A stretch of 60,298 bases of DNA, counting the filler, from Hausera hauseri (lineage: Eukaryota): NCBI GenBank assembly GCA_046269625.1. It is 10 parts of 10 records of this genome, joined end to end, with 100 filler letters (N's around TTAATTAATTAA, not from the genome) between each part and the next. Parts side by side here need not be neighbours in the genome. Positions count along the whole stretch, not along the records: positions 48,240 to 53,636 come from JBJURY010262621.1; positions 53,737 to 60,298 come from JBJURY010086657.1; 8 more parts are not named here. The stretch is one strand, 5' to 3'. A program made the position numbers and the translations under genes. This document shows positions 37,383 through 54,552 of this stretch, piece after piece (positions within the stretch are counted from its first letter, which is position 1; each line of letters opens with the position of its first letter). The notes below the pieces were generated by a model. It worked only from the letters and a program-made list of their open reading frames with translations, was not told the origin of the DNA and did not search any database.

Positions 37383-39570
37383 TTCGTGATTGTCATTTTA
37401 AAATCTGCCCAATGAGCCGGTATTCTGCACAGAAGCAATTCTGGAGTACAACGAAACATGGTTCGCACAACAATGGCGACGCCGTACTGATCAACAAACT
37501 GCATAGTGCTGCAGAACTTGAAAAAACGCAAATTAAATGGAATATAAAAAGCTTCCAGGAACTGTATTACAGTATGGTTCGATTATACAGCTTCTCCATA
37601 TCTAGAGTAACAAAATACTAACTGTCAATAAAAAGCTCCCGGCTTTGTTAGAAAAAACGCAATGCGGGTGTATTTAGACGTTAATGGCAACGAAGGATCT
37701 TGGTTATATGTTCAACCGTTTTATAAACACTGTTCAGTTGGCGATAATATTGTTGTTGGGGACAAAGCGATATTGAATCCCGTCAACGCTGGGCAACCAT
37801 TGCATGTTAGTCATTACGATTTATTAGATCATATCGAATGCAACGAAGTAAATGCTGTGAACTGTAGTACATCATCGTAAATCACACTTTTCATGGATTT
37901 CAAGGAAAATATTGACGATGTTTTAAAAGGGTGAAATCTTGTGAGACTGTTTCATACCGAACAAGAAAAGTTTTTGACCTGTGATGAATACAAAAAGGAA
38001 AGATACGTTTTCCTTCATACAATAGCTCGCGCAACTGTAACTCCTGCAACGGGTATTCCAATTGATAGGGATGCTGAAAAACCAATCATGCACAACGTAT
38101 GCTGTGCTTTGTTGGAGGAAGACAAAGAAGCTTTTGCAGTTGCACCGATATCTGCTCAAAAAGTTCCAGATTTAGATTTTTCTAACGATGCCAGTAAAGT
38201 ACTTTCTGTTGTAAAGCAAAAAATTATACAGCTCGCCGCCAATGATAAAATTGTCTATAACCTTCTTTCCTTAATTGTGCAGTTCCTTTGTTCACTGGAG
38301 GACACAACTGGGGACCCATTAGAATTGGAAGTAAAATGCATTACTAGATATCGTCGGAAATTATCAAAAGAAAAAAATATTTTGAAGCAGATTTTTAAAA
38401 TACTCGAAAGTCCACTGTTAACCGATTTCCCCATTAAAATGGAAGACTTATCTGATCAGAAAAATATCGCGTTTAAAAATATTTGCCGGCTTTGTTACAG
38501 AATTCTAAAACTATTCCAGCAAGACTCGGAAGAATCAGGAATACATTGCAAAGCAACTTCCGATGATGCAAAAAAGATTGGCTGCGGCATTTTGCCTGAA
38601 GATACTGTGACTGCTTTGTTGCATAATAATCGGAAACTGCTAGAAAAACACATTACAGTATCTGAAATAAATACTTTCATAAATTTAATACGGAAGGGAA
38701 CAGATAGCAGATTTTTGGATTACTTATCAGATTTATGTATATCAACAATATTGCCATCCCTGTGACACAGGAATTGATCTGCAAATGTATATTTAATGAA
38801 GAAAATCAGGATATTCTGATAAAGACATTTATATACAAGAAAATTGAAATTGAATATGAAGTTAAACCCGATTATGGATTTGAAGATGATTACGTATTAA
38901 ATATGGCTGAATATGATAAAATCAAGGAAGCGCAGACAATTTTATAAACCGAGGAAGAAGACACAATCATTTATTGGGAATGTGGAAAACATTCTAGAAT
39001 CTTTTAGAATTAGTTCAAGCAGCCAATAATGGCTCCAAAGATGATGAATCAATTCTAAGCTATTACAGATGTCAGTTTGTACTTTTCTCGAATCTTTGTT
39101 TGGACCGTCAGTATTTGGCCATAAATGACTTATCAAGAGAACAAAGTACAGATCTTATGTTAAGTGCATCTCCACTGATATGTTGCCACATAGTCTTCGT
39201 GCCTCATTTTGCCGTTTGTTGATACATTTACATGTGGATAGAGATCCACAAAATGTTACGCAATCTATTAAATTCGCAAGACTATAGGCTGACCTCCCGG
39301 AATCAATGGATATTGACAGTAACGAAACTACAGACTCGGAAGACGAAGTCAAGGAGGAAGTGAAACAAAATTTTACACCAGTTATCAGCTTTGTAGAAGA
39401 ATGACTAAATAATGTCGTCAATAACAATTTAATGCTCTCAATTCAGAACAAAATAAACTTACATTCGAGATTGAAACTGGTTTGACATCTTATATATTTT
39501 GGTTTCTACTCATTCCATGATTTACTTCAGTTAGTGAAAACTTTACTAAGAATTCTGGATTGTGTCATCC
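37383..39570 (+). pseudogene. ITPR: Inositol 1,4,5-trisphosphate receptor N-terminal fragment, intronless and disrupted
   Basis: [139 protein letters not shown]. No introns seen over ~2.2 kb. Internal deletion, stops and frameshifts. Confidence 0.93.
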
Positions 39571-39880
39571 CTTCAAAGACACCAACTTCGGACCTTTCGA
39601 TAACCTTTGCATATCCAATTTTGTATGGAAACAAATCGCTTCCAAAATCAGAAATGAAAAATTATTTAAACTGTGCCGATCAAATAATGCGTATTTCAAA
39701 CGAATATTTCGCTTCTACACACAAAATAAGCTTATTGATTACCAATTTCGGCGTGTTTTGCAACCTTACAGTCTCCGCTTTATCCGCTCCAGATATTTAT
39801 GTGCGACTGCCCATTAAGACTGACGAACCCCGATTCATTAAACGCAGTGAAACAAGTAAGAATTCGGCCACCCTGCATTT

Positions 39881-40563
39881 TGGTGCCCGCCCCGCCGGGG
39901 CGGAGGTCCCGACCGCCAACCCTGCGCCGGTTGGTCGGACGGTATCTTCGGCGTCGGCCCCACATCACGCCCCCAGGCGCACCACTTTCACTTCCATTTT
40001 TTTAACAATATACATATCACCACCTTCAATACAACACATCCACACATTCCCGCCCTTCAAACATGCGTTTCTTCCTTACTTAATTCTTCCGACTTTTACC
40101 TTACCCATAACAACGCTCTCATACATTTCAACGGAACTCTACCTTCTTTCTCAAATCACACTTGCTTCAACATACATCTCCGTATCAGCGGTGGCATGAA
40201 TTCTTCGGCAACCATTGACACCACGGATACAACCACTACAAAAAAGGCAATACCCATTCTCTACTACCCCAAACCAAACCATCTACCTACTTCAATCGAT
40301 GCAAATTCTTCTCACAAAAATCCTACCAATACTTCTCCACATTGCACTGAATACTTCATAGATAATGAAAAGTCCAGCAAAACTTTGCTCCACTTCCATC
40401 AACTCTGGTTATAGTCCAACGGTATCACAGACTCGTTATCCGAAGCCCATAACCTACTTTATCTTCTACCAAACTCTATAAAGGCCTCAATCCATAACCT
40501 ACTTGACATCTTTCAACACTCTGACCCTTATACCCAATTGTTCGATGCTGTGTTAAAACAGAC
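39881..40563 (+). mobile_element. CsRn1-like gypsy 5' fragment: PBS-like motif, GC-rich leader, truncated gag (ATG 40196)
   Basis: TGGTGCCC at 39881 is followed by hairpins (CCGCCCC-GCC-GGGGCGG). The gag N-terminus MNSSATIDTTD...DPYTQLFDAVLK is homologous to that starting at 50774. Confidence 0.7.
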
Positions 40564-40564
40564 A

Positions 40565-41065
40565 TAAGAAGACGATGCTTATCTTCGACGTCCAATCAGC
40601 ATGCGACCTGACTTTGTTGATGTATATCAAAACAGAGGAGACATTTTATAAAACTTGGCAAATCGGATGAAGCAAGAAATAAGTATATAACCGCACTTCA
40701 ATATAGGCAAAACAGTGCAGATTTGCACTACAATTTGGGTGTTGTAAATATGGAAATGAAAAGGAATGATGAAGCTATTAATTGCTTTTATGCATCGCTC
40801 AAAATTGATCCCAATCATAAACACGCACGGTTAAGTTTGGCATCGTTTTATTCTGACAATCCAGAGAAGCGAGAAGAAGCCAAAACAATATATTATGACC
40901 TAATAAAACTAAATTTCGAAGTCGAGAAATGTCATTTTGCTCTTGCTATGATGGAAACGGATGATAAAATTTCCAACTTGCTGAGAAACATTATCTTCAG
41001 TCGCTAAAGTATGATCCAACGTCTCGTGGATCATTATTCAATCTTGCCTTATTGCATAACAATGA
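40565..41065 (+). pseudogene. TPR fragment of a TMTC-family (TMTC3-like) protein, intronless and disrupted
   Basis: ISMRPDFVDVYQNRGDIL, ADLHYNLGVV..E....EA...F..SLKIDPNHKHA, LAMMETDDK, RGSLFNLALL follow the order of the TMTC3 TPR region. Confidence 0.7.
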
Positions 41066-41397
41066 ATTTATGACGTTTGTTTTAGTTGAATATTGTATTT
41101 ACTATCAGTTGTACAGAGTTGAATAAAAAATTGATTTTCTGCCATTTTTTGAACATTTATTTGACGTTTTTCAGAAATCAGGCAATTTCAACCGTTTGGA
41201 TTTTTTTTATTGCGGATATTAATCATACAACTATAAATTGGTGTCAGATTTTACCTCTAAATATTCGAAATTGGAGCTATTTGTTCAAGATGCAATCAAA
41301 GCAGAAAGCAGGATTTAAATTCAATTCCTTTAAAAAGAATCCAAGTACTAAAATAACTCCTAATGAACCGATCATTTTCCCAAACAAATCCAATACG

Positions 41398-41460
41398 AAC
41401 GACCGATGTATTGTTCAACCGTCAGATGGTGATCTAAGGAATCCGCCAAAAAGTTTTATG
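41398..41460 (+). pseudogene. ITPR: ITPR fragment that belongs immediately upstream of 37383
   Basis: NDRCIVQPSDGDLRNPPK corresponds to ITPR 'DDRCVVQP..GDLNNPPKK', whose continuation 'FRDC.FK' is at 37383. Confidence 0.85.
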
Positions 41461-48239: not shown

Positions 48240-48890
48240 GGTATTGTCACAGAAGGATAGTTTGGGGCGCGAGAGAGTGATTGCGTACGGATCACACACA
48301 ATGAACAGCCATGAAAGGGGATATTGTATTACTCGGAAAGAACTACTGGCCATGTATTATTTCTGTCAACATTTCAACCATTACCTATACGGAAAACGCT
48401 TCACATTAAGAACAGACCACAAGACAATAACGTTCATGGTAAAGACAAAAAAACCAATAACAGCCCAATTTCAGACGTGGATCAACTAACTATCCACTCT
48501 AAATATCAACCTGGAGTACAAAAAAGACACAGATCATGCAAACGCAGATATGCTGTCTCGCACAAGTTGCGAAACATGCAGTTAATGTCTACAACAACAT
48601 GACGATGCCAAGATGCAGAAAAGCAAGACTCGAATGATAAATGTCGTAGAAACAGCAGAAACATACAAATACCTGAAGGACAGCAAGGAAATTAAAGAAA
48701 TAAACGAAAGCATTGCCAGACGAAAATAAGAAAGATTTATACTAGAAGACGAAATAATAAAAACAGAAACAAGTAAGATTTGGGTACCAACGAACAGACG
48801 ATTAGAAATGATAACGCATAACCATGTCATGCTGTTTCACGCAGGATTAGAAGAGGTAATAAAATACATTGACAGTAACTATGACATGGA
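48240..48890 (+). mobile_element. pol: Gypsy RNase H - integrase start, same family as 19822-20457
   Basis: High nucleotide similarity to 19822-20457 (VLSQKDSLGR, TRKELLAMYYFC, TDHK, NADMLS, HNHVML.HAG). Confidence 0.92.
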
Positions 48891-48999
48891 CTCTGGTGCC
48901 CACAGCGGCCGGTGCTCTTTGGCATATTTGGTCGGACGCAGCCGGGCATCCGTCCCAGCTGCGTTCTGTCCATAGACGGGCCCCAAACTTCCTCTTCGA

Positions 49000-50330
49000 A
49001 AATTTTTGATTTTTGCTCAAATAGACCTTTTTCTTCGATTGCGACCAAATATTTTTCATGTTGCTGAAACATACGACACAGAACTTCTCGATTTCGTTGG
49101 AATGGCCATTGAAAAATGTCATGGAGTATGTGAAAGTACGTGGCAATTTGACTATAATGGAATTAATCCATCCCTTGACTATATGGAAAAGAAACTAGAC
49201 CCAATCGTAATGCAAACTAAAAAACCATCTCATGGTTTTCTCGATCACTACTCGCAGTTACCTGAAATAAGAGACATTCATCGACCAAATTTCAACTCAG
49301 TCAGTGCTCCAAGATCTGCTAGAACTGTAGGCAGTTCATAATTTGATTCAGGGGATTCTTTTAACATTACACCGCGCTCACAACTACCTCGAAGTATCAG
49401 TGCTGATACATTAACATCTATGAAGTTTGAATCGGATTTCCAGTTGGATCGTTGTCTTCACAAACTCCGGTACCCGGGCATTAAAAATATTCAGGAATAG
49501 AATTCTCGATATACAATCAGCTATAATATGCTTGAATTCTCCGGAAATGACGACAATGCCTCAACCAAAACGAGTGTTACATTGAACGACAAACTTGCGA
49601 AAATGGTTCAGTCCAACCCTGTGCCCGATTTATTATCATTATCCAATTCTGGAATCATTATGGATGACTTAGATAAAATAGCAAATTTCGAAAAACTCGA
49701 ATACTTTACATCGTCGCTTGAATCCATCCAGGTAAGCTCACGAATGCTTCGGTCTTGTTCATCTTCACTCGAAGAAGTTCTGACAATTATTTCTGACAGT
49801 CACCAAGTAAAAAAGGAAGATGAGTTACATCCATTGCGGCCTCCATCGCTGACAACATCAATCATGTAATTGCAGAGTATTATAACAATCGATGACAATG
49901 TTTCACCAAAAAATTCGTATATGGCTTTGAAAATGGTTGCCAATTATTACAGAAATCCAAAACTAACTAGACATGCTGTTGTTGGTCATCTCCCTGAAAC
50001 GTTCTTTGGGAAATTTGGACGTATGATACAAAATCAAATTCACATTAATATGATTTTCTCAAATATTCTGCTCACTCTTATGTCATATCCTCACCCGCTG
50101 TTGCACAATTATTTGGTTGGCTTTGCCAGGACTTGGCAGACGGCGTTGGTTCACCTTACTTTGCTTTTAAATCATACAGTTGAAATTCGCAGGATGCAAA
50201 ATAAAAACCAACATATCAAAAAGTGATGACAAATATTTTCAGATACTCGATATCGATGCTACACAAACTCTAGAGACGACTTCATTTATCGGCAGAGAAA
50301 ATTATTTCATGGAGCAATGAACCTGAAACT
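49000..50330 (+). pseudogene. FHIP/FAM160-family fragment, intronless and disrupted
   Basis: 'IEKCHGVCESTWQFDYNG' and 'GHLPETFFGKFGRMIQNQIHINMIFSNILLTLMSYPHPLLHNYL' resemble the FAM160A 'C..AC..W...YDG' and 'GPFL..LF.KLE.M..N...VN..LT......A.YPQPLLRSFL' blocks. Confidence 0.65.
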
Positions 50331-50439
50331 GCCGTAATCGTTGAGGCCGACTCATCGCCAATGGAATACGCGAACAATCCGTCATTGGTCCGTAAAATGG
50401 ACTTGTTGCGTAGTGAACATGGAGTGACAGATGAGGAGA

Positions 50440-52220
50440 CTACATGCGGAGACCGCGGCTACCCCGAAATTTGCGACCCTCCGCGGCGAGGCTAAAGCCC
50501 CGGCCGCCCATCCTATTCGCTGCCGCACCATGACACGCTCCCGGTTGCACGACCTCTCAATATTTCCTTTTCTTTTTTCTAAATAACAAACATGTTTGGA
50601 CAAATGCAGTTACACACCTAAACACTATAGCTATCTACAACTTCATCTCCACTTCTCTTCGCTCACCTGACTTATATCTCACACACCACGGCTCCACGTT
50701 ACCTCTCGTTGGGACCCTGAAATCTTCTTCATCTAATATCTATCTTCACATACACTTTTGCATCCGCGGTGGCATGGATTCATCACCCACTATTGATACC
50801 ACGGACAAACCCACCAAACCACCGATCTCCATCACTTACCTACCAAAACAAAGTGCTTCAAACACTCCGACACAGCACACATTCCCCGCTCATTCACCCT
50901 GCACAGAATAATTCCTCGACAGCCAAAATTCTACCCAAACATGGCTAAAACTGCATCAATTCTGGCTACAATTACGAAACGTCGTCGACCCATTATCCAA
51001 AGCCAACAGCATGTTTTTTGATTTAAATGCTTTTATCAAAACCAAAATTACAAACATCATCGACATCCTTCACAACACCGATCCATATGCTCAACTTCAT
51101 AATTCCGTTCTTAAGCTTACTGAACCATCAATCGACTCTATCATTCAAAGGTTCCTCAATGACAACGCCATGGGCCTACAGAAGCCTTCTGAATTCTTGC
51201 GAACATCTTTGTCTCACCTTAATACCCTTGGCGTAACATCTGGGCATAGTCTAGAACTTCTTCGTCGTTACTTTTTAAACGCACTGGAAAAGTTAGCCGA
51301 ACTGGCGGACAAAGCCTATGAAGTGCTGCACTCACACACAGCAACAACTGTCTCTGCGGCATTAACAACAAACCACCAACAACAAAATGCAGTTCTGCAG
51401 CAACAAATTGCGCAATTACGCACAGGCAACGAAATTTTGCAAAAACAATTAATAACATAAACGAGAAACTAAATGAGTTAACGCTGCCTCGACGAGGTTT
51501 TTCTAGGGCTGTTTCCCCTAATGTATTTCATCAACGACAAGGACGGTCGACTTCCTTCGGGCGGTAGTCTATTTGCTACTATCACAACAAATTTGGTAAC
51601 AATGCTCAGAAATGCTGCATCGGTTGTAAATTTTACTCCACTAATTTTAATACAAGCAATATCGTTTGCATCTATCACGCAAAATTTGGAACAAAAGCAC
51701 AAAAATACCTACCTGGCTGTAACTACAACACGCACAATAAAATCAACACTACTAAATTCACACAAAATGGCAGGCCAAACTCACCAGCTACAAAAAACTA
51801 ATTTCGCCGCTAGGACACACGGCAAGTTCTAGCGAAGGCAACAACCTACAAAAAGATAGCCAACACATTTCTTTGGCTGTATTCACGTTTGAAGCAGCAG
51901 TCGTCACTCAAACAAAGCAAAACATTAATTTTTTTATAGACAGCGGCGCAGCAATCTCTTTACTACCACAAACACAGCACATCCAAAACAATTTCACTTC
52001 AAAAAGCAACTGTTCACTGCGTCCGGTGAACCTTTACAAACTTTTAGTGTTACTAAATTAACTTTTACACTTCAAAATTTTCCAAACACATTTACAACGA
52101 AATTTACAGTAGCCAATGTACGCACACCTATATTGGGTCCAGACTTTCTTTCCCACTACAATTTACTTGTAGACTGCAAACGATGTTCCTTAAAGAGCAG
52201 AAATAATTTTAATCAAATTA
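50440..52220 (+). mobile_element. CsRn1-like gypsy leader - gag (two CHCC-type boxes) - protease
   Basis: gag from ATG 50774 with DPYAQL and MGLQKPSEFLR; CYYHNKFGNNAQKCCIGC and CIYHAKFGTKAQKYLPGC (~51575-51725); FFIDSGAAISLLP; VANVRTPILGPDFLSHYNLLVDC. Confidence 0.85.
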
Positions 52221-52399
52221 GCAGCATTTCGGTGACCACCCGGGCGATCGCTTCCAGCAAGTCAATACTAAAGGAAACTGTGGTGCCCGCGCCGATCGTC
52301 GTCCTCCGGCCCATTCTGCTGGGCACGGCCGGGTTTTCCGTTGCCGACGCGTCGAGCACATAGGCAGGCCCCGATTTTCTTTACTAAAAATGTTAACAT

Positions 52400-53500
52400 T
52401 TTTGCAAACAAATCCAAATTACCTGATATACATTTCGTTAATATTCGACTTTATGACAATGATCCTATCAGTCAACGGCCTCATCATGAATATATTTTCC
52501 AGCATAACATGATGACGGGTAATTTCAATGAAATCTCAACGTCTGTCACTTTAGTCACTGATTTAATTACCGAAATTAAGTCAAATCTACGGAATGTGAA
52601 AATCGTATTTTTCCCATCACAGATAGTTAAAAGAAAATCCGACGATTCATGGGCTTGATCCGTGAAATACTAAGTTCACAGATAACTGAGCTTCCATCAA
52701 ACCATTTAAAACAAAATAACTCTAGTCGATTGTCAGTTTATTCAGATATTTATCAGAAGTCCATCAAAACTTCATTTTCAGACGTAAAAATTGATGGAAA
52801 GGAAAATATTGTTAGTAAAAGATGTAAAACTCAGAACGATGACAATGAAATATACAGAGCACCTCTGTACAACAACAAGGAGGAAAACAGTATGGCTAGT
52901 GACAATTTTTTAAATCAATCCGATATATCAGTCAACCGAGTTCATTCCGATTTATCAGTCAATCGAATTCAATCCGATTATACTCCTGAAACAAATATGG
53001 AAATGGGATTTTCTAATAAAACGATTAAACCATATTTCCTCGAAACAAACTTTATTAATAACCTTTTGCGACCTCCGATTCACGACAATTCCAGATAGCG
53101 TCGATTACACTATTTAAATAAAGAGTGAATTGAATAAATTGGAGATTAAGAAAAATGAGGCTGAATTACTTGAAGATATCACGGATTACATTTGAGATTT
53201 ATCGAAGTCCATGGGTTTTGTTTCCTAGAATATTCAGAAAACGTGTGCTCCCTGAAATAACCGATGAAATGAAGGAAATGGTCAGATGTTGGGTTTATAC
53301 GGAGAGACAAGATACTGTTGCGATGGAGGCATTTAATTTATCGGTTATAGTTACGGATCTGATTTCATTGCAACCTAAACAGTGGCTGACGGATAATGTT
53401 ATAAATTTCTATTTGGAACTTATATATGAACAAATTAACAGTTCTACCGATAAACTAAATTTGCAGATTTTAATAACTTTCTTTTATACAAAATTGGTGC
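52400..53500 (+). pseudogene. SENP/Ulp1 SUMO protease fragment (N-terminal region and start of the C48 domain)
   Basis: LPEITDEMKEMV...QDTVAMEAFNLSVIVTDLISLQPKQWLTDNVINFYLELI...TFFYTKL. Catalytic residues are absent because of truncation. Assignment of the upstream part is less certain. Confidence 0.75.
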
Positions 53501-54552
53501 CTCATATTATTCAGGATACTCTGTATTGTTCTGGCGAATGTCAAAACGAGTTTGGGCTATGTTGAATTATGGTGTGGTGTGTTGTCAAATGCTACATATG
53601 TACAGGGATTAGACCTTTGTTTTGATGTATTAAATTNNNNNNNNNNNNNNNNNNNNNNNNNNNNNNNNNNNNNNNNNNNNTTAATTAATTAANNNNNNNN
53701 NNNNNNNNNNNNNNNNNNNNNNNNNNNNNNNNNNNNTATGCTTCGTGTTCCACCACTGGATTAACATGTCCGACAGACTTGTTTCGGAGTCCCAATTGGG
53801 ACGAGTAAACAGATTTTGCACAAGACATGTAAGATTGGGTACAAATGACGGATGCTTGTCTTATATATTTTCATGGTTTGCAAACAAGTTTTGACATGTT
53901 TGTCTGATGCAATGTTTGATCCTCCCAAAGTTGGAAATAATTTCTTCTGTTTCCAGGACGCACTATGAGGATGTGTTGAATGGTCATGTTCCCCTTTTCT
54001 GCTTTTCTGAAATTTAAAAAAAAATTGTTTCGTTTCTTTTTCCATTTTTACCTACTGATGTAGTAGCACAATTCGGGAAATTAAAGATAGGCAGGGTTGG
54101 TAGAAACAGCTACACCTGCAAACATACAAACCGGGAGATGGTGAATGCAATCATAAATGGAAAGTCAGTAAGCACATTTCCGTGGTGAACAAAAAACAGC
54201 AAAAAGCACCGAGATATACGTTTGCGTCACATGACAACTGGAGTCGGTCAAGGAAAAAAGTGTGGTGACACAAGACAATGGAGCTAGTCAGTCAGACAGT
54301 GGTGCGACACAAGACAAAGACAGTTGGCCATACAGATTCGCCATAGAGTTGGCCAGACCGAGGTTGATCCAGAAGTCGTGGAGTTGTTGATGCAATTGAT
54401 CACTCAGTTTGCCAGAAATTTTCCTTCTGCCCATATCGCCATCGAGTTGTCATCCCTTTATAATGCCATCCACGTTATTAATAACTTCCTTTTAATAACA
54501 TCATCGAATTTAAATAACTTGAATTTTAGATTAATTTAATTCAATTTATTTC

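What the first reader, a model, noticed from the sequence alone, without database searches (positions are those of the whole stretch)
48240..53636. Same-strand mosaic of host-gene and gypsy fragments joined at LTR-less PBS-like motifs
Seen: the contig reads gypsy RH/IN | TGGTGCCC GC-rich leader | FHIP fragment | GC-rich leader, CsRn1-like gag-protease | CGGTGACC and TGGTGCCC leaders | SENP fragment. Every piece is on the + strand and no introns are visible. The PBS-like motifs (48894, 52230, 52281) follow retroelement coding or leader sequence, not an LTR. Established: in LTR retroelements, minus-strand synthesis runs to the PBS because RNase H has removed R-U5, and co-packaged cellular mRNAs can be copied by template switching. 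Inference: RT repeatedly reached the PBS end of one template and jumped to another RNA, building multi-gene concatemers. This would be a retroelement-driven gene-shuffling system. Contig 37383-41460 shows the same design with the same gag family.
Basis: partly seen in the sequence, partly recalled or inferred. Interest (0 to 1): 0.85.

Follow-up and report, generated by a model that had tools for sequence, protein, structure and literature searches.

The report
Decayed retroelement and host-gene cDNA mosaic
This 5.4 kb contig is a decayed, multi-copy patchwork of two retrotransposon fragments and two intron-free host-gene copies, all on one strand; it was most likely built by reverse transcriptase jumping between RNAs, a known process seen here in an unusual retroelement family whose capsid gene carries a ubiquitin-like domain.

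Summary
On the + strand lie a gypsy RNase H/integrase remnant (to 48891), a 98-nt GC-rich module (A), an FHIP-like pseudogene in one frame, a second GC-rich island (B), a CsRn1-clade gag-protease, a third GC-rich module (C) and a SENP1-like fragment.

A and C are homologous. Both begin T(C/G)TGGTGCCC directly after truncated retroelement coding sequence, with no LTR.

Corrections:
- B is not related to A or C.
- The "leader" before gag encodes a ubiquitin-like domain ending RGG.
- That TGGTGCCC is a primer-binding site is unproven. It could also be an LTR start, or the fixed end of a 1.8 kb high-copy unit.

Short-read contigs from two runs show every segment is repeated, at very different copy numbers. 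Diverged copies carry the FHIP-side|B and protease|C0 junctions, so an assembly chimera is unlikely.

Two independent relatives of this gag in public assemblies are single ORFs joining host fragments to the ubiquitin-like domain and gag: CARM1 in one, DIS3L1 plus CNOT1 in the other. The design therefore recurs.

Best reading: RT template-switch chimeras that were later amplified and decayed. I rate this a new variant of a known kind, of moderate-to-high interest.

The parts
48240..48891 (+). Remnant of a very high-copy Ty3/gypsy pol: the RNase H domain and the first part of integrase. It is cut at 48891 and has 3 in-frame stops.
   Evidence: Pfam RT_RNaseH E 1.3e-22. Depth is 1.7e5-4.8e5 against about 7 for unique sequence, and 26 contigs of other copies diverge right after 48891. 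Stop count.
48892..48989 (+). Module A: a 98-nt, 63% GC module beginning TCTGGTGCCC. It is homologous to module C.
   Evidence: Self-BLAST 48890-49016 against 52277-52405: 63% over 130 nt, E 4e-6. Shuffle z = 18. The GC parts alone give z = 7.8. Identity is 61%, with 25 transitions and 13 transversions.
48990..49016 (+). AT-rich hairpin-like tail after module A. It is weakly similar to the tail after module C.
   Evidence: Tail-only alignment p = 0.016. A hairpin is predicted in both tails.
49017..50229 (+). FHIP-like (FHF complex subunit) processed-pseudogene fragment covering the C-terminal half of the CDS in one frame. It has 3 in-frame stops and ends at TGA TGA (50224-50229).
   Evidence: Frame from 48976. 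DUF5917 E 1e-8. Human FHIP1B residues 738-800, E 7e-4. Atlas neighbours carry DUF5917. Summed depth of 50-120, against about 7 for unique sequence, means about 8-16 copies at 90% identity or more.
50230..50434 (+). Sequence between the FHIP stop and island B. It is either FHIP 3' UTR or the 5' non-coding part of the gag element. It holds a weak tRNA-Trp-PBS-like string (ATGGAGTGAC) at 50419.
   Evidence: Read directly from the sequence. Depth rises from 87 to 205 to 315 across 50040-50579. The boundary was not resolved.
50435..50559 (+). Island B: 125 nt and about 65% GC, lying upstream of the Ubl-gag ORF. It is not homologous to A or C. One contig of the second run joins 50434 to 50560 without it.
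   Evidence: Composition. No similarity to A or C. An X1 contig at about 91% identity spans 50291-50490, and an X2 joint runs 50434 to 50560. Translated similarity to relatives starts at about 50525.
50561..50773 (+). Ubiquitin-like domain remnant, in frame with gag and ending ...CIRGG directly before the gag Met (50774).
   Evidence: All relatives have a conserved RLxGG before gag (alignment A4). The AlphaFold model of relative P0005 matches ubiquitin (Foldseek probability 0.96-1.0, TM to target about 0.6, rmsd 2.1-2.5 A over about 60 residues). Pfam gives a sub-threshold ubiquitin hit in P0008 (E 1e-3). Translation.
50774..51795 (+). CsRn1-clade gag: a DUF7041-like/capsid-like domain plus two CHCC knuckles (about 51574-51627 and 51667-51720). 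It has one in-frame stop and one frameshift near 51460.
   Evidence: Translations. The CX2HX9CX3C definition comes from PMC2582038. Relatives P0001-P0013 share 42-47% identity. Depth is 5.6e3-1.5e4.
51796..52229 (+). Aspartic protease (DSG at about 51939-51947, ILGPDFL...LVD) with a frameshift near 52000. Coding stops shortly after the protease and there is no RT.
   Evidence: Translations. Weak Pfam RVP hit.
52230..52278 (+). C0: begins CGGTGACCACCCGGG, which resembles the CsRn1-clade tRNA-Trp PBS with a 2-nt insertion, and ends with the purine run AAAGGAAA (52270-52277). It is joined to the protease in other copies too.
   Evidence: PBS consensus TGGTGA(G/C)CCCG(T/A) from PMC2582038. An X2 contig spans 52158-52273, and an X1 joint runs 52188 to 52244. 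Purine runs of 8 nt or more occur 14 times in 5.4 kb.
52279..52379 (+). Module C: 101 nt, 67% GC, beginning TGTGGTGCCC. It is part of the high-copy gag-protease unit, whose depth drops sharply after 52379.
   Evidence: Homology to A. Depth is about 1e4 in 52200-52379 and 154 in the next bin, and an X2 contig diverges at 52379.
52380..52405 (+). AT-rich tail holding an 18-nt perfect palindrome (52386-52403).
   Evidence: Read directly from the sequence. Self-BLAST inverted match. Predicted fold.
52406..53494 (+). SENP1-like fragment: a non-conserved N-terminal region plus the first 83 or so residues of the C48 catalytic domain. The frame is broken twice (near 52650 and between 53098 and 53155). 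Homology stops after FFYTKL.
   Evidence: Peptidase_C48 E 7e-5. SENP1 catalytic domain residues 6-88, E 3e-10. Translations. Depth of 20-37 means about 3-5 copies.
53495..53636 (+). Unidentified AT-rich tail starting TGGTGCCT. It is not related to A or C. A 45-nt stretch (53556-53601) matches a high-depth repeat.
   Evidence: Motif search. No homology. Loose ends at 53556 and 53601 in both runs.

Best explanation
The contig is a genomic fossil of chimeric retro-copies.

Inferred origin: reverse transcriptase copying one RNA switched templates several times. The templates were a CsRn1-clade Ubl-Gag-protease retroelement RNA, a second gypsy RNA, FHIP and SENP1 mRNAs, and a roughly 100-nt GC-rich RNA or leader that begins T(G/C)TGGTGCCC. 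Every copied piece therefore lies on the same strand, without introns and without LTRs between pieces.

Shown:
- The products, or parts of them, were then multiplied. The gag-protease-C0-C unit has about a thousand or more copies, the FHIP-bearing part about ten, and the SENP part a few.
- They have since decayed through stops and frameshifts.

Inferred: the template switching itself. These could not be told apart.

Why fusions may be tolerated: the ubiquitin-like domain ending RGG directly before Gag suggests that host deubiquitinases release Gag from whatever is fused upstream. That would explain why relatives carry host fragments in frame.
For: - All coding remnants are on the + strand and identified.
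- FHIP is one uninterrupted frame of 416 codons.
- The gypsy copy is cut at 48891, where 26 other copies continue.
- Homologous modules A and C start within 2 nt of truncated retroelement coding sequence.
- Two junctions are present in diverged copies: an X1 contig at 91% identity across 50291-50490, and an X2 contig across 52158-52273.
- Copy numbers differ by orders of magnitude between neighbouring segments, as expected for pieces of independent origin.
- The design recurs in relatives of the same gag. P0013 is CARM1 (E 4e-80) + linker + Ubl-gag. P0010 and P0002 are DIS3L1 (E 4e-25) + CNOT1 (E 1e-16) + Ubl-gag. Each is one ORF, and P0010 and P0002 are two slightly different copies.
- The Ubl fold and RLxGG motif are supported.
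- Known precedents for RT template-switch chimeras exist (PMC1950507, PMC2104539).
Against: - No junction shows clear microhomology, a poly(A) tail or target-site duplications.
- The FHIP left edge is mid-CDS, so at least that switch did not happen at an RNA 5' end.
- Both A and C end at about the same place and are followed by unrelated host sequence. That needs an extra assumption: a short RNA, a splice donor or an element terminus.
- The gypsy|A junction itself was not seen in an independent contig.
- DNA-level rearrangement of a repeat-rich region could give a similar picture.
- The relatives are known only as predicted proteins.
Confidence: 0.55

Rival explanations
1. Inside virus-like particles, minus-strand synthesis ran to the primer-binding site of an RNase-H-trimmed template and then jumped to a co-packaged RNA, repeatedly. 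Each segment therefore starts with a PBS (TGGTGCCC, CGGTGACC) plus a GC-rich leader. It is a sub-case of the best explanation.
For: - A and C start with TGG...; 2 nt upstream lies truncated retroelement coding sequence and no LTR.
- C0 resembles the CsRn1-clade tRNA-Trp PBS.
- GC-rich sequence follows each motif.
- In P0010 the residues right after the CNOT1 fragment (GDADR) are what a tRNA-Trp-type PBS would encode in one frame. This is an inference from the protein only.
Against: - No tRNA or tRNA-like sequence matches beyond about 8-12 nt, and ARAGORN and Rfam find nothing.
- A and C are followed by host sequence, not by gag, so the 'leader + host' RNAs would already have to be chimeras.
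- B has no such motif.
- FHIP is cut mid-CDS.
- Depth stays at about 1e4 through C0 and C and drops at 52379. C therefore behaves as the 3' end of the gag-protease unit, not as the 5' end of the low-copy SENP piece.
- The string at 52230 needs a 2-nt insertion and a first-base change to fit the PBS, and it fails a 3-mismatch search.
Confidence: 0.2
2. This is a DNA-level mosaic: ordinary nested insertions, deletions and end-joining in a repeat-rich region. A and C would be 5' parts of LTRs, or small solo LTRs starting TGT, of an abundant family. FHIP and SENP would be ordinary processed pseudogenes that happen to lie beside them.
For: - C begins TGT, as CsRn1-clade LTRs do, and is preceded by the purine run AAAGGAAA, which looks like a polypurine tract.
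- A possible 4-bp duplication AAAC flanks 52279-52405.
- Module C is high-copy and copies diverge after 52379, like an element end.
- Every segment is a repeat with its own copy number.
Against: - A lacks a polypurine tract, and its flanks are not contiguous gypsy sequence; the gypsy continuation seen in other copies is nowhere in the piece.
- A and C are only 61% identical, so they are not the LTR pair of one element.
- No second LTR copy lies upstream of Ubl-gag.
- All six or so pieces share one strand, about 1 in 32 by chance for independent events.
- The same host-upstream-of-gag design recurs in P0010 and P0013.
Confidence: 0.25
3. This is an assembly or library chimera. Repeats shared between unrelated loci, or in-vitro template switching during library preparation, joined pieces that are not neighbours in the genome.
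For: - The piece is a short contig made almost wholly of repeats.
- Only 52% of its sampled 31-mers are in the best run, and no contig spans the whole piece.
- The gypsy|A and C|SENP junctions were not seen bridged in the rows shown.
Against: - Diverged copies (about 90-92% identity) carry the FHIP-side|B and protease|C0 junctions, the latter in a second organism's run.
- Host fragments carry stops and frameshifts and are multi-copy, so they are not transcripts of the working genes.
- Independent public assemblies show the same design.
Confidence: 0.06

Closest known systems
Gene transduction by LTR retroelements: maize Bs1 and retroviral oncogene capture by read-through plus RT template switching (from my own knowledge; plant cases reviewed in PMC13317346)
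   Same: Intron-free host gene fragments lie on the same strand as gag. In the relatives P0010 and P0013 they are fused in frame with gag. Non-homologous RT template switching between co-packaged RNAs is the accepted cause.
   Different: No LTRs flank the mosaic here. Several unrelated pieces are chained. GC-rich roughly 100-nt modules sit at two joins. The host is an AT-rich invertebrate-like genome with a CsRn1-clade element. The copy studied is decayed.
Complex LTR retrotransposon insertions made by template switching in Triticeae (PMC1950507)
   Same: Abnormal arrangements of LTR-element parts are explained by RT switching between templates during one replication cycle rather than by later DNA recombination.
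   Different: Those cases join element to element and keep LTRs. Here host mRNA copies are included and LTRs are missing.
LINE-mediated chimeric retrogenes: U6-L1 chimeras and the tripartite WEIRD/MGL pseudogenes of Magnaporthe (PMC2104539, PMC4476161)
   Same: Two or three RNA copies are fused head to tail on one strand. One partner is a short abundant RNA copied to its exact 5' end. The upstream partner is cut at an arbitrary internal point. Modules A and C could play the part of the short RNA.
   Different: No poly(A), LINE tail or target-site duplication was found. The partners are LTR-element RNAs. The module matches no known small RNA family.
CsRn1 clade of Ty3/gypsy elements (CsRn1, PwRn1, AgCR; PMC2582038)
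   Same: The gag carries the clade's CX2HX9CX3C (CHCC) signature, twice. A degenerate tRNA-Trp-type PBS string lies at 52230.
   Different: The published descriptions read here do not mention a ubiquitin-like domain before gag. Here there are no LTRs, no RT, RNase H or integrase belonging to this gag, and no intact PBS next to an LTR.
Ubiquitin-fusion release of viral proteins: host ubiquitin inserts upstream of NS3 in cytopathic pestiviruses, and natural ubiquitin-ribosomal protein fusions (from my own knowledge)
   Same: A ubiquitin fold ending in GG lies directly before the protein to be released, so cellular deubiquitinases could free it whatever lies upstream.
   Different: Cleavage is untested here. 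The domain is a diverged ubiquitin-like fold (about 20% identity), and it is a standing feature of a retroelement gag family rather than a sporadic insert.

Membership tests
CsRn1 clade (Ty3/gypsy) | Gag with the CHCC signature CX2HX9CX3C | tested here: met
   Two copies sit in the frame from 51463. The first is intact. The second has its third Cys position changed. Definition from PMC2582038.
CsRn1 clade (Ty3/gypsy) | tRNA-Trp primer-binding site TGGTGA(G/C)CCCG(T/A) directly after the 5' LTR | tested here: not met
   Only degenerate strings occur (52230 CGGTGACCACCCGG, 50419 ATGGAGTGAC), and neither lies next to an LTR. The 13-mer search with 3 mismatches hits only 52281.
CsRn1 clade (Ty3/gypsy) | LTR pair with TGT...ACA termini and a 4-bp target duplication | tested here: not met
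   No long direct repeat pair is present. A and C are 61% identical roughly 100-nt modules.
LTR-retroelement gene transduction (Bs1 or oncogene type) | Host-derived sequence without introns, on the same strand as the element's genes | tested here: inconclusive
   Same strand, and long single frames are present. The parent genes could not be read, so intron loss is not shown.
LTR-retroelement gene transduction (Bs1 or oncogene type) | The chimera is bounded by the element's LTRs, so it can be replicated and integrated | tested here: not met
   No LTRs occur in the piece. The contig ends may hide them.
LINE-type chimeric retrogene | A 3' poly(A) or LINE tail, and target-site duplications around the whole chimera | tested here: inconclusive
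   There is no poly(A). The AT-rich tails after A and C share ...TTTTTGC..CAAAT (p = 0.016), which could be a tail or a short duplication. Nothing is clear.
LINE-type chimeric retrogene | One partner is a defined short cellular RNA copied to its 5' end | tested here: inconclusive
   A and C share exact 5' starts at the joins. However, they match no tRNA or Rfam family, and no transcript data were found.
Primer-binding site of an LTR retroelement | About 18 nt complementary to the 3' end of a host tRNA, 0-5 nt after U5 | not testable with these tools
   The organism's tRNA genes and full-length elements are not available. Only TGGTGCCC (8 nt) is conserved between A and C, with 13 of 18 positions shared.
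Ubiquitin-like domain | Beta-grasp fold ending in a (R)LxGG tail | tested here: met
   The model of relative P0005 matches many ubiquitin chains (probability 0.96-1.0, rmsd 2.1-2.5 A). RLxGG is conserved in 10 relatives, and the piece has IRGG. Sequence-only evidence is weak (E 1e-3 to 0.15).

The most novel reading that the evidence does not exclude
A lineage of CsRn1-clade retroelements, found in several animals, carries a ubiquitin-like 'self-releasing' domain in front of Gag. It habitually picks up host mRNA fragments upstream of that domain by RT template switching at or near its primer-binding site. The resulting LTR-less chimeras can still multiply (here to a thousand or more copies of the gag-protease-module unit). 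Some stay open as host-Ubl-Gag fusion genes. That would be a retroelement-driven exon-shuffling system in animals.
Probability: 0.2. Interest if true: 0.8.

Novelty: new variant of a known kind. Interest (0 to 1): 0.6.

Why it matters
- Outside retroviral oncogenes, gene capture by LTR-type retroelements is well documented mainly in plants. A recurrent animal case would give a second, testable route to new chimeric genes besides LINE-made retrocopies. It is seen here in one decayed locus and in two intact fusion ORFs from other assemblies.
- The ubiquitin-like domain ending in GG directly before Gag may be of interest in itself. It predicts that host deubiquitinases mature the capsid protein, and it explains how N-terminal fusions can be tolerated. 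I found no description of it in the literature searched.
- If the 1.8 kb LTR-less gag-protease-module unit really has a thousand or more copies with a fixed 3' end, how it multiplies is an open question.

Tried and rejected
- **tRNA or known RNA identity of the GC-rich modules.** ARAGORN found none and Rfam nothing relevant at E up to 1. Folding is not clearly better than shuffles (A z = -2.6, C z = -0.5). Two-sequence covariation is too thin to count.
- **B, or the 53495 tail, as further members of the A/C family.** No similarity, also not in purine/pyrimidine coding.
- **A and C as the LTR pair of one element carrying FHIP and gag.** Rejected: 61% identity is far more diverged than the coding parts allow, and CpG is not depleted (o/e 1.04), so fast CpG decay cannot explain it.
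- **A as a simple insertion into the gypsy copy.** The gypsy continuation seen in other copies is nowhere in the piece.
- **TIR transposon or MITE (A...B as inverted ends), or Helitron capture.** No inverted homology and no matching ends.
- **Homology of A/C translations to the linkers of P0010, P0013 or P0001.** Not significant, so the idea that those linkers hold the same module rests only on reading back from protein.
- **Searches that found nothing.** A protein search with the ORF spanning the protease-C junction. Metagenome scans for relatives of the gag.
- **P0007**, a 4579-aa hit, is a coiled-coil false positive.
- **No RNA run** holds the piece. This says nothing about expression.
- **Organism.** The source organism could not be named, because the runs are coded.

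Full report
**What is in the sequence**

The piece 48240-53636 has no Ns and is about 37% GC. It holds three sharp GC-rich islands at about 48892-48989, 50435-50559 and 52230-52379 (61-67% GC). All recognisable coding remnants lie on the + strand.

- **48240-48891: gypsy pol remnant.** It is an RNase H domain (Pfam RT_RNaseH, E 1.3e-22) followed by the first part of an integrase, with three in-frame stops.
- **48976-50229: FHIP-like fragment.** It is a single reading frame of about 416 codons with three in-frame stops and no frameshift, ending at TGA TGA. Its last part is an FHIP family C-terminal domain (DUF5917, E 1e-8; human FHIP1B residues 738-800, E 7e-4; Atlas neighbours carry DUF5917).
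- **50561-52229: a gag-protease unit.** The gag has two CX2HX9CX3C knuckles, the signature of the CsRn1 clade (PMC2582038). The protease has a DSG motif. No RT follows.
- **52406-53494: SENP1-like fragment.** It covers a non-conserved N-terminal region and the first 83 or so residues of the C48 catalytic domain (SENP1, E 3e-10; Pfam). The frame is broken twice.

**The junction modules**

- **A and C are homologous.** The island after the gypsy remnant (A, 48892-48989) and the one after the protease (C, 52279-52379) match by self-BLAST (E 4e-6), with shuffle z = 18. Identity is 61%, with 25 transitions and 13 transversions.
- **Both start at a cut in coding sequence.** Each begins T(C/G)TGGTGCCC, immediately after truncated retroelement coding sequence.
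- **The gypsy cut is exact.** Twenty-six contigs from other gypsy copies match up to 48891 and then continue with different sequence that reads on as integrase.
- **The AT-rich tails are weakly similar.** This holds for the tails after A and C (p = 0.016). The C tail holds an 18-nt perfect palindrome (52386-52403).
- **B is unrelated.** Island B is not similar to A or C in either orientation.
- **The third near-match is unrelated too.** TGGTGCCT at 53495, where SENP homology ends, starts sequence unrelated to A or C.
- **No known RNA family fits.** None of the islands is a tRNA or a known RNA family, and none folds clearly better than shuffled sequence.

**The "leader" is partly a gene**

I aligned the gag with its few relatives in public protein sets. 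There are nine at E < 1e-3, the best at 42-47% identity. All of them have a conserved block ending RLxGG directly before gag.

An AlphaFold model of one relative matches ubiquitin chains over this block (Foldseek probability 0.96-1.0, rmsd 2.1-2.5 A, about 20% identity). The rest of the model matches retroviral and Arc/PEG10 capsid domains.

In the piece this domain is 50561-50773 and ends ...IRGG just before the gag Met. Only island B and the sequence before it are candidates for a true 5' non-coding region.

**Evidence from sequencing runs**

Two runs hold parts of the piece, both as short contigs. Contigs identical to the piece have depth about 7. Summed depths give rough copy numbers at 90% identity or more:

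| Segment | Summed depth | Approximate copies |
|---|---|---|
| gypsy remnant | 1.7e5-4.8e5 | very high |
| FHIP part | 50-120 | 8-16 |
| 50400-50579 (includes B) | 315 | not estimated |
| 50580-50759 | about 1.8e3 | not estimated |
| 50760-52379 (gag, protease, C0, C) | 5.6e3-1.5e4 | a thousand or more |
| SENP part | 20-37 | 3-5 |

Depth falls to 154 in the bin after 52379, which belongs to the SENP part. Three points follow.

1. The host-derived pieces are themselves repeated and broken, so they are not the working genes.
2. Two junctions exist in diverged copies. An X1 contig at about 91% identity spans 50291-50490. An X2 contig from the second organism spans 52158-52273, and an X1 contig joins 52188 to 52244. 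An assembly chimera is therefore unlikely for these joins. The gypsy|A and C|SENP joins were not seen bridged in the rows shown.
3. Depth stays high through C0 and C and collapses at 52379, where an X2 contig also diverges. No well-supported alternative continuation is listed at 52229 or 52278. Module C thus behaves as the fixed 3' end of a 1.8 kb gag-protease unit whose 5' side fades gradually. This is an inference from binned depths, not a direct count.

**Recurrence elsewhere**

Searches with the gag region found very few long relatives, and the two independent long ones that carry recognisable domains upstream of gag are both fusions.

- **P0013 (900 aa):** CARM1 (residues 136-398, E 4e-80), then a linker of about 80 residues, then Ubl and gag.
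- **P0010 and P0002 (1051 and 996 aa, two slightly different copies):** DIS3L1 from its N-terminus (45-361, E 4e-25), then a CNOT1 fragment (439-544, E 1e-16), then Ubl and gag. Sources.

The host parts are over 1 kb without interruption and lie on the same strand. These cases are in frame.

Three caveats apply. These are predicted proteins from assemblies of unknown organisms. Finding them through ORFs favours in-frame cases.

**How it most likely arose**

Reverse-transcriptase template switching best explains the combination of same-strand order, intron-free host pieces, sharp cuts inside coding sequence, missing LTRs and recurrence with one gag family. This is the known cause of retroviral and Bs1-type transduction. 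It is also the cause of complex LTR insertions (PMC1950507) and of LINE-made bi- and tripartite chimeras (PMC2104539).

I could not decide which RT and which intermediate were involved.

- The modules start with TGG.
- C0 resembles the clade's tRNA-Trp PBS.
- The sequence after each motif is GC-rich.

- A and C are followed by host sequence, not gag.
- FHIP is cut mid-CDS.
- B lacks the motif.
- No tRNA match could be tested.
- The depth profile ties C to the upstream unit.

*The alternatives:*
- A short-RNA or 3'-tail reading, as in LINE chimeras, explains the shared 5' and 3' limits of A and C and the fixed 3' end. It lacks a poly(A), clear target duplications and a known RNA.
- An LTR-start reading has some support. 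C begins TGT and follows a purine run; such runs occur 14 times in 5.4 kb.
- That reading fails for A. A and C are also too diverged to be one element's LTR pair, and CpG is not depleted, so fast CpG decay is no excuse.

**Function**

The copy in the window is dead. It has stops in every coding part, and the gag, protease and SENP parts also have frameshifts. I give no account of how any frame could be restored.

The intact fusion ORFs of the relatives, and the GG-ended ubiquitin fold before Gag, suggest a working logic in living members. Whatever is fused upstream could be removed by cellular deubiquitinases, so upstream captures are tolerated. This is inferred and not tested.

**Verdict**

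- It is a new variant of a known kind.
- Its interest is raised by the recurrence in other loci and by the ubiquitin-like domain before Gag.

Noticed in passing
window 50561-50773; relatives P0001, P0004-P0006, P0008-P0013: This CsRn1-like gag family has a ubiquitin-like domain ending RLxGG (IRGG in the window) directly before the gag Met. The structure model matches ubiquitin (Foldseek probability about 0.99). I found no description of it in the papers searched.
   Followed up: partly
proteins P0013, P0010 and P0002 (ENA assemblies; DNA not available): These are single ORFs joining host fragments to Ubl-gag of the same family: CARM1 in P0013, and DIS3L1 plus CNOT1 in P0010 and P0002. P0010 and P0002 are two slightly different copies of the same mosaic, which suggests it multiplied after it formed.
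   Followed up: partly
window 48240-48891: The gypsy RNase H/integrase family has summed contig depth of 1.7e5-4.8e5 against about 7 for unique sequence in run X1. That is an extraordinarily abundant family, if depth can be taken at face value.
   Followed up: no
window 50580-52379: The gag-protease-C0-C stretch behaves as a 1.8 kb high-copy unit with a sharp 3' end at 52379 and a gradually fading 5' side. It has no LTRs and no RT. How such a unit multiplies is unexplained.
   Followed up: partly
window 52386-52403: An 18-nt perfect palindrome (AAAAATGTTAACATTTTT) lies just after module C. A similar hairpin-forming stretch follows module A (about 48997-49016).
   Followed up: partly
window 48240-53636: CpG observed/expected is 1.04 over the piece, and CpG is not depleted in the GC-rich modules. 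There is thus no footprint of CpG methylation in this genome region.
   Followed up: no
window 52915-52968: A 27-nt unit is repeated twice in tandem (85% identity) within the non-conserved N-terminal part of the SENP-like fragment.
   Followed up: no
window 53556-53601: A 45-nt TG-rich stretch matches high-depth contigs in both runs, with unrelated sequence on both sides. It is a short repeat or low-complexity match, not an element.
   Followed up: no
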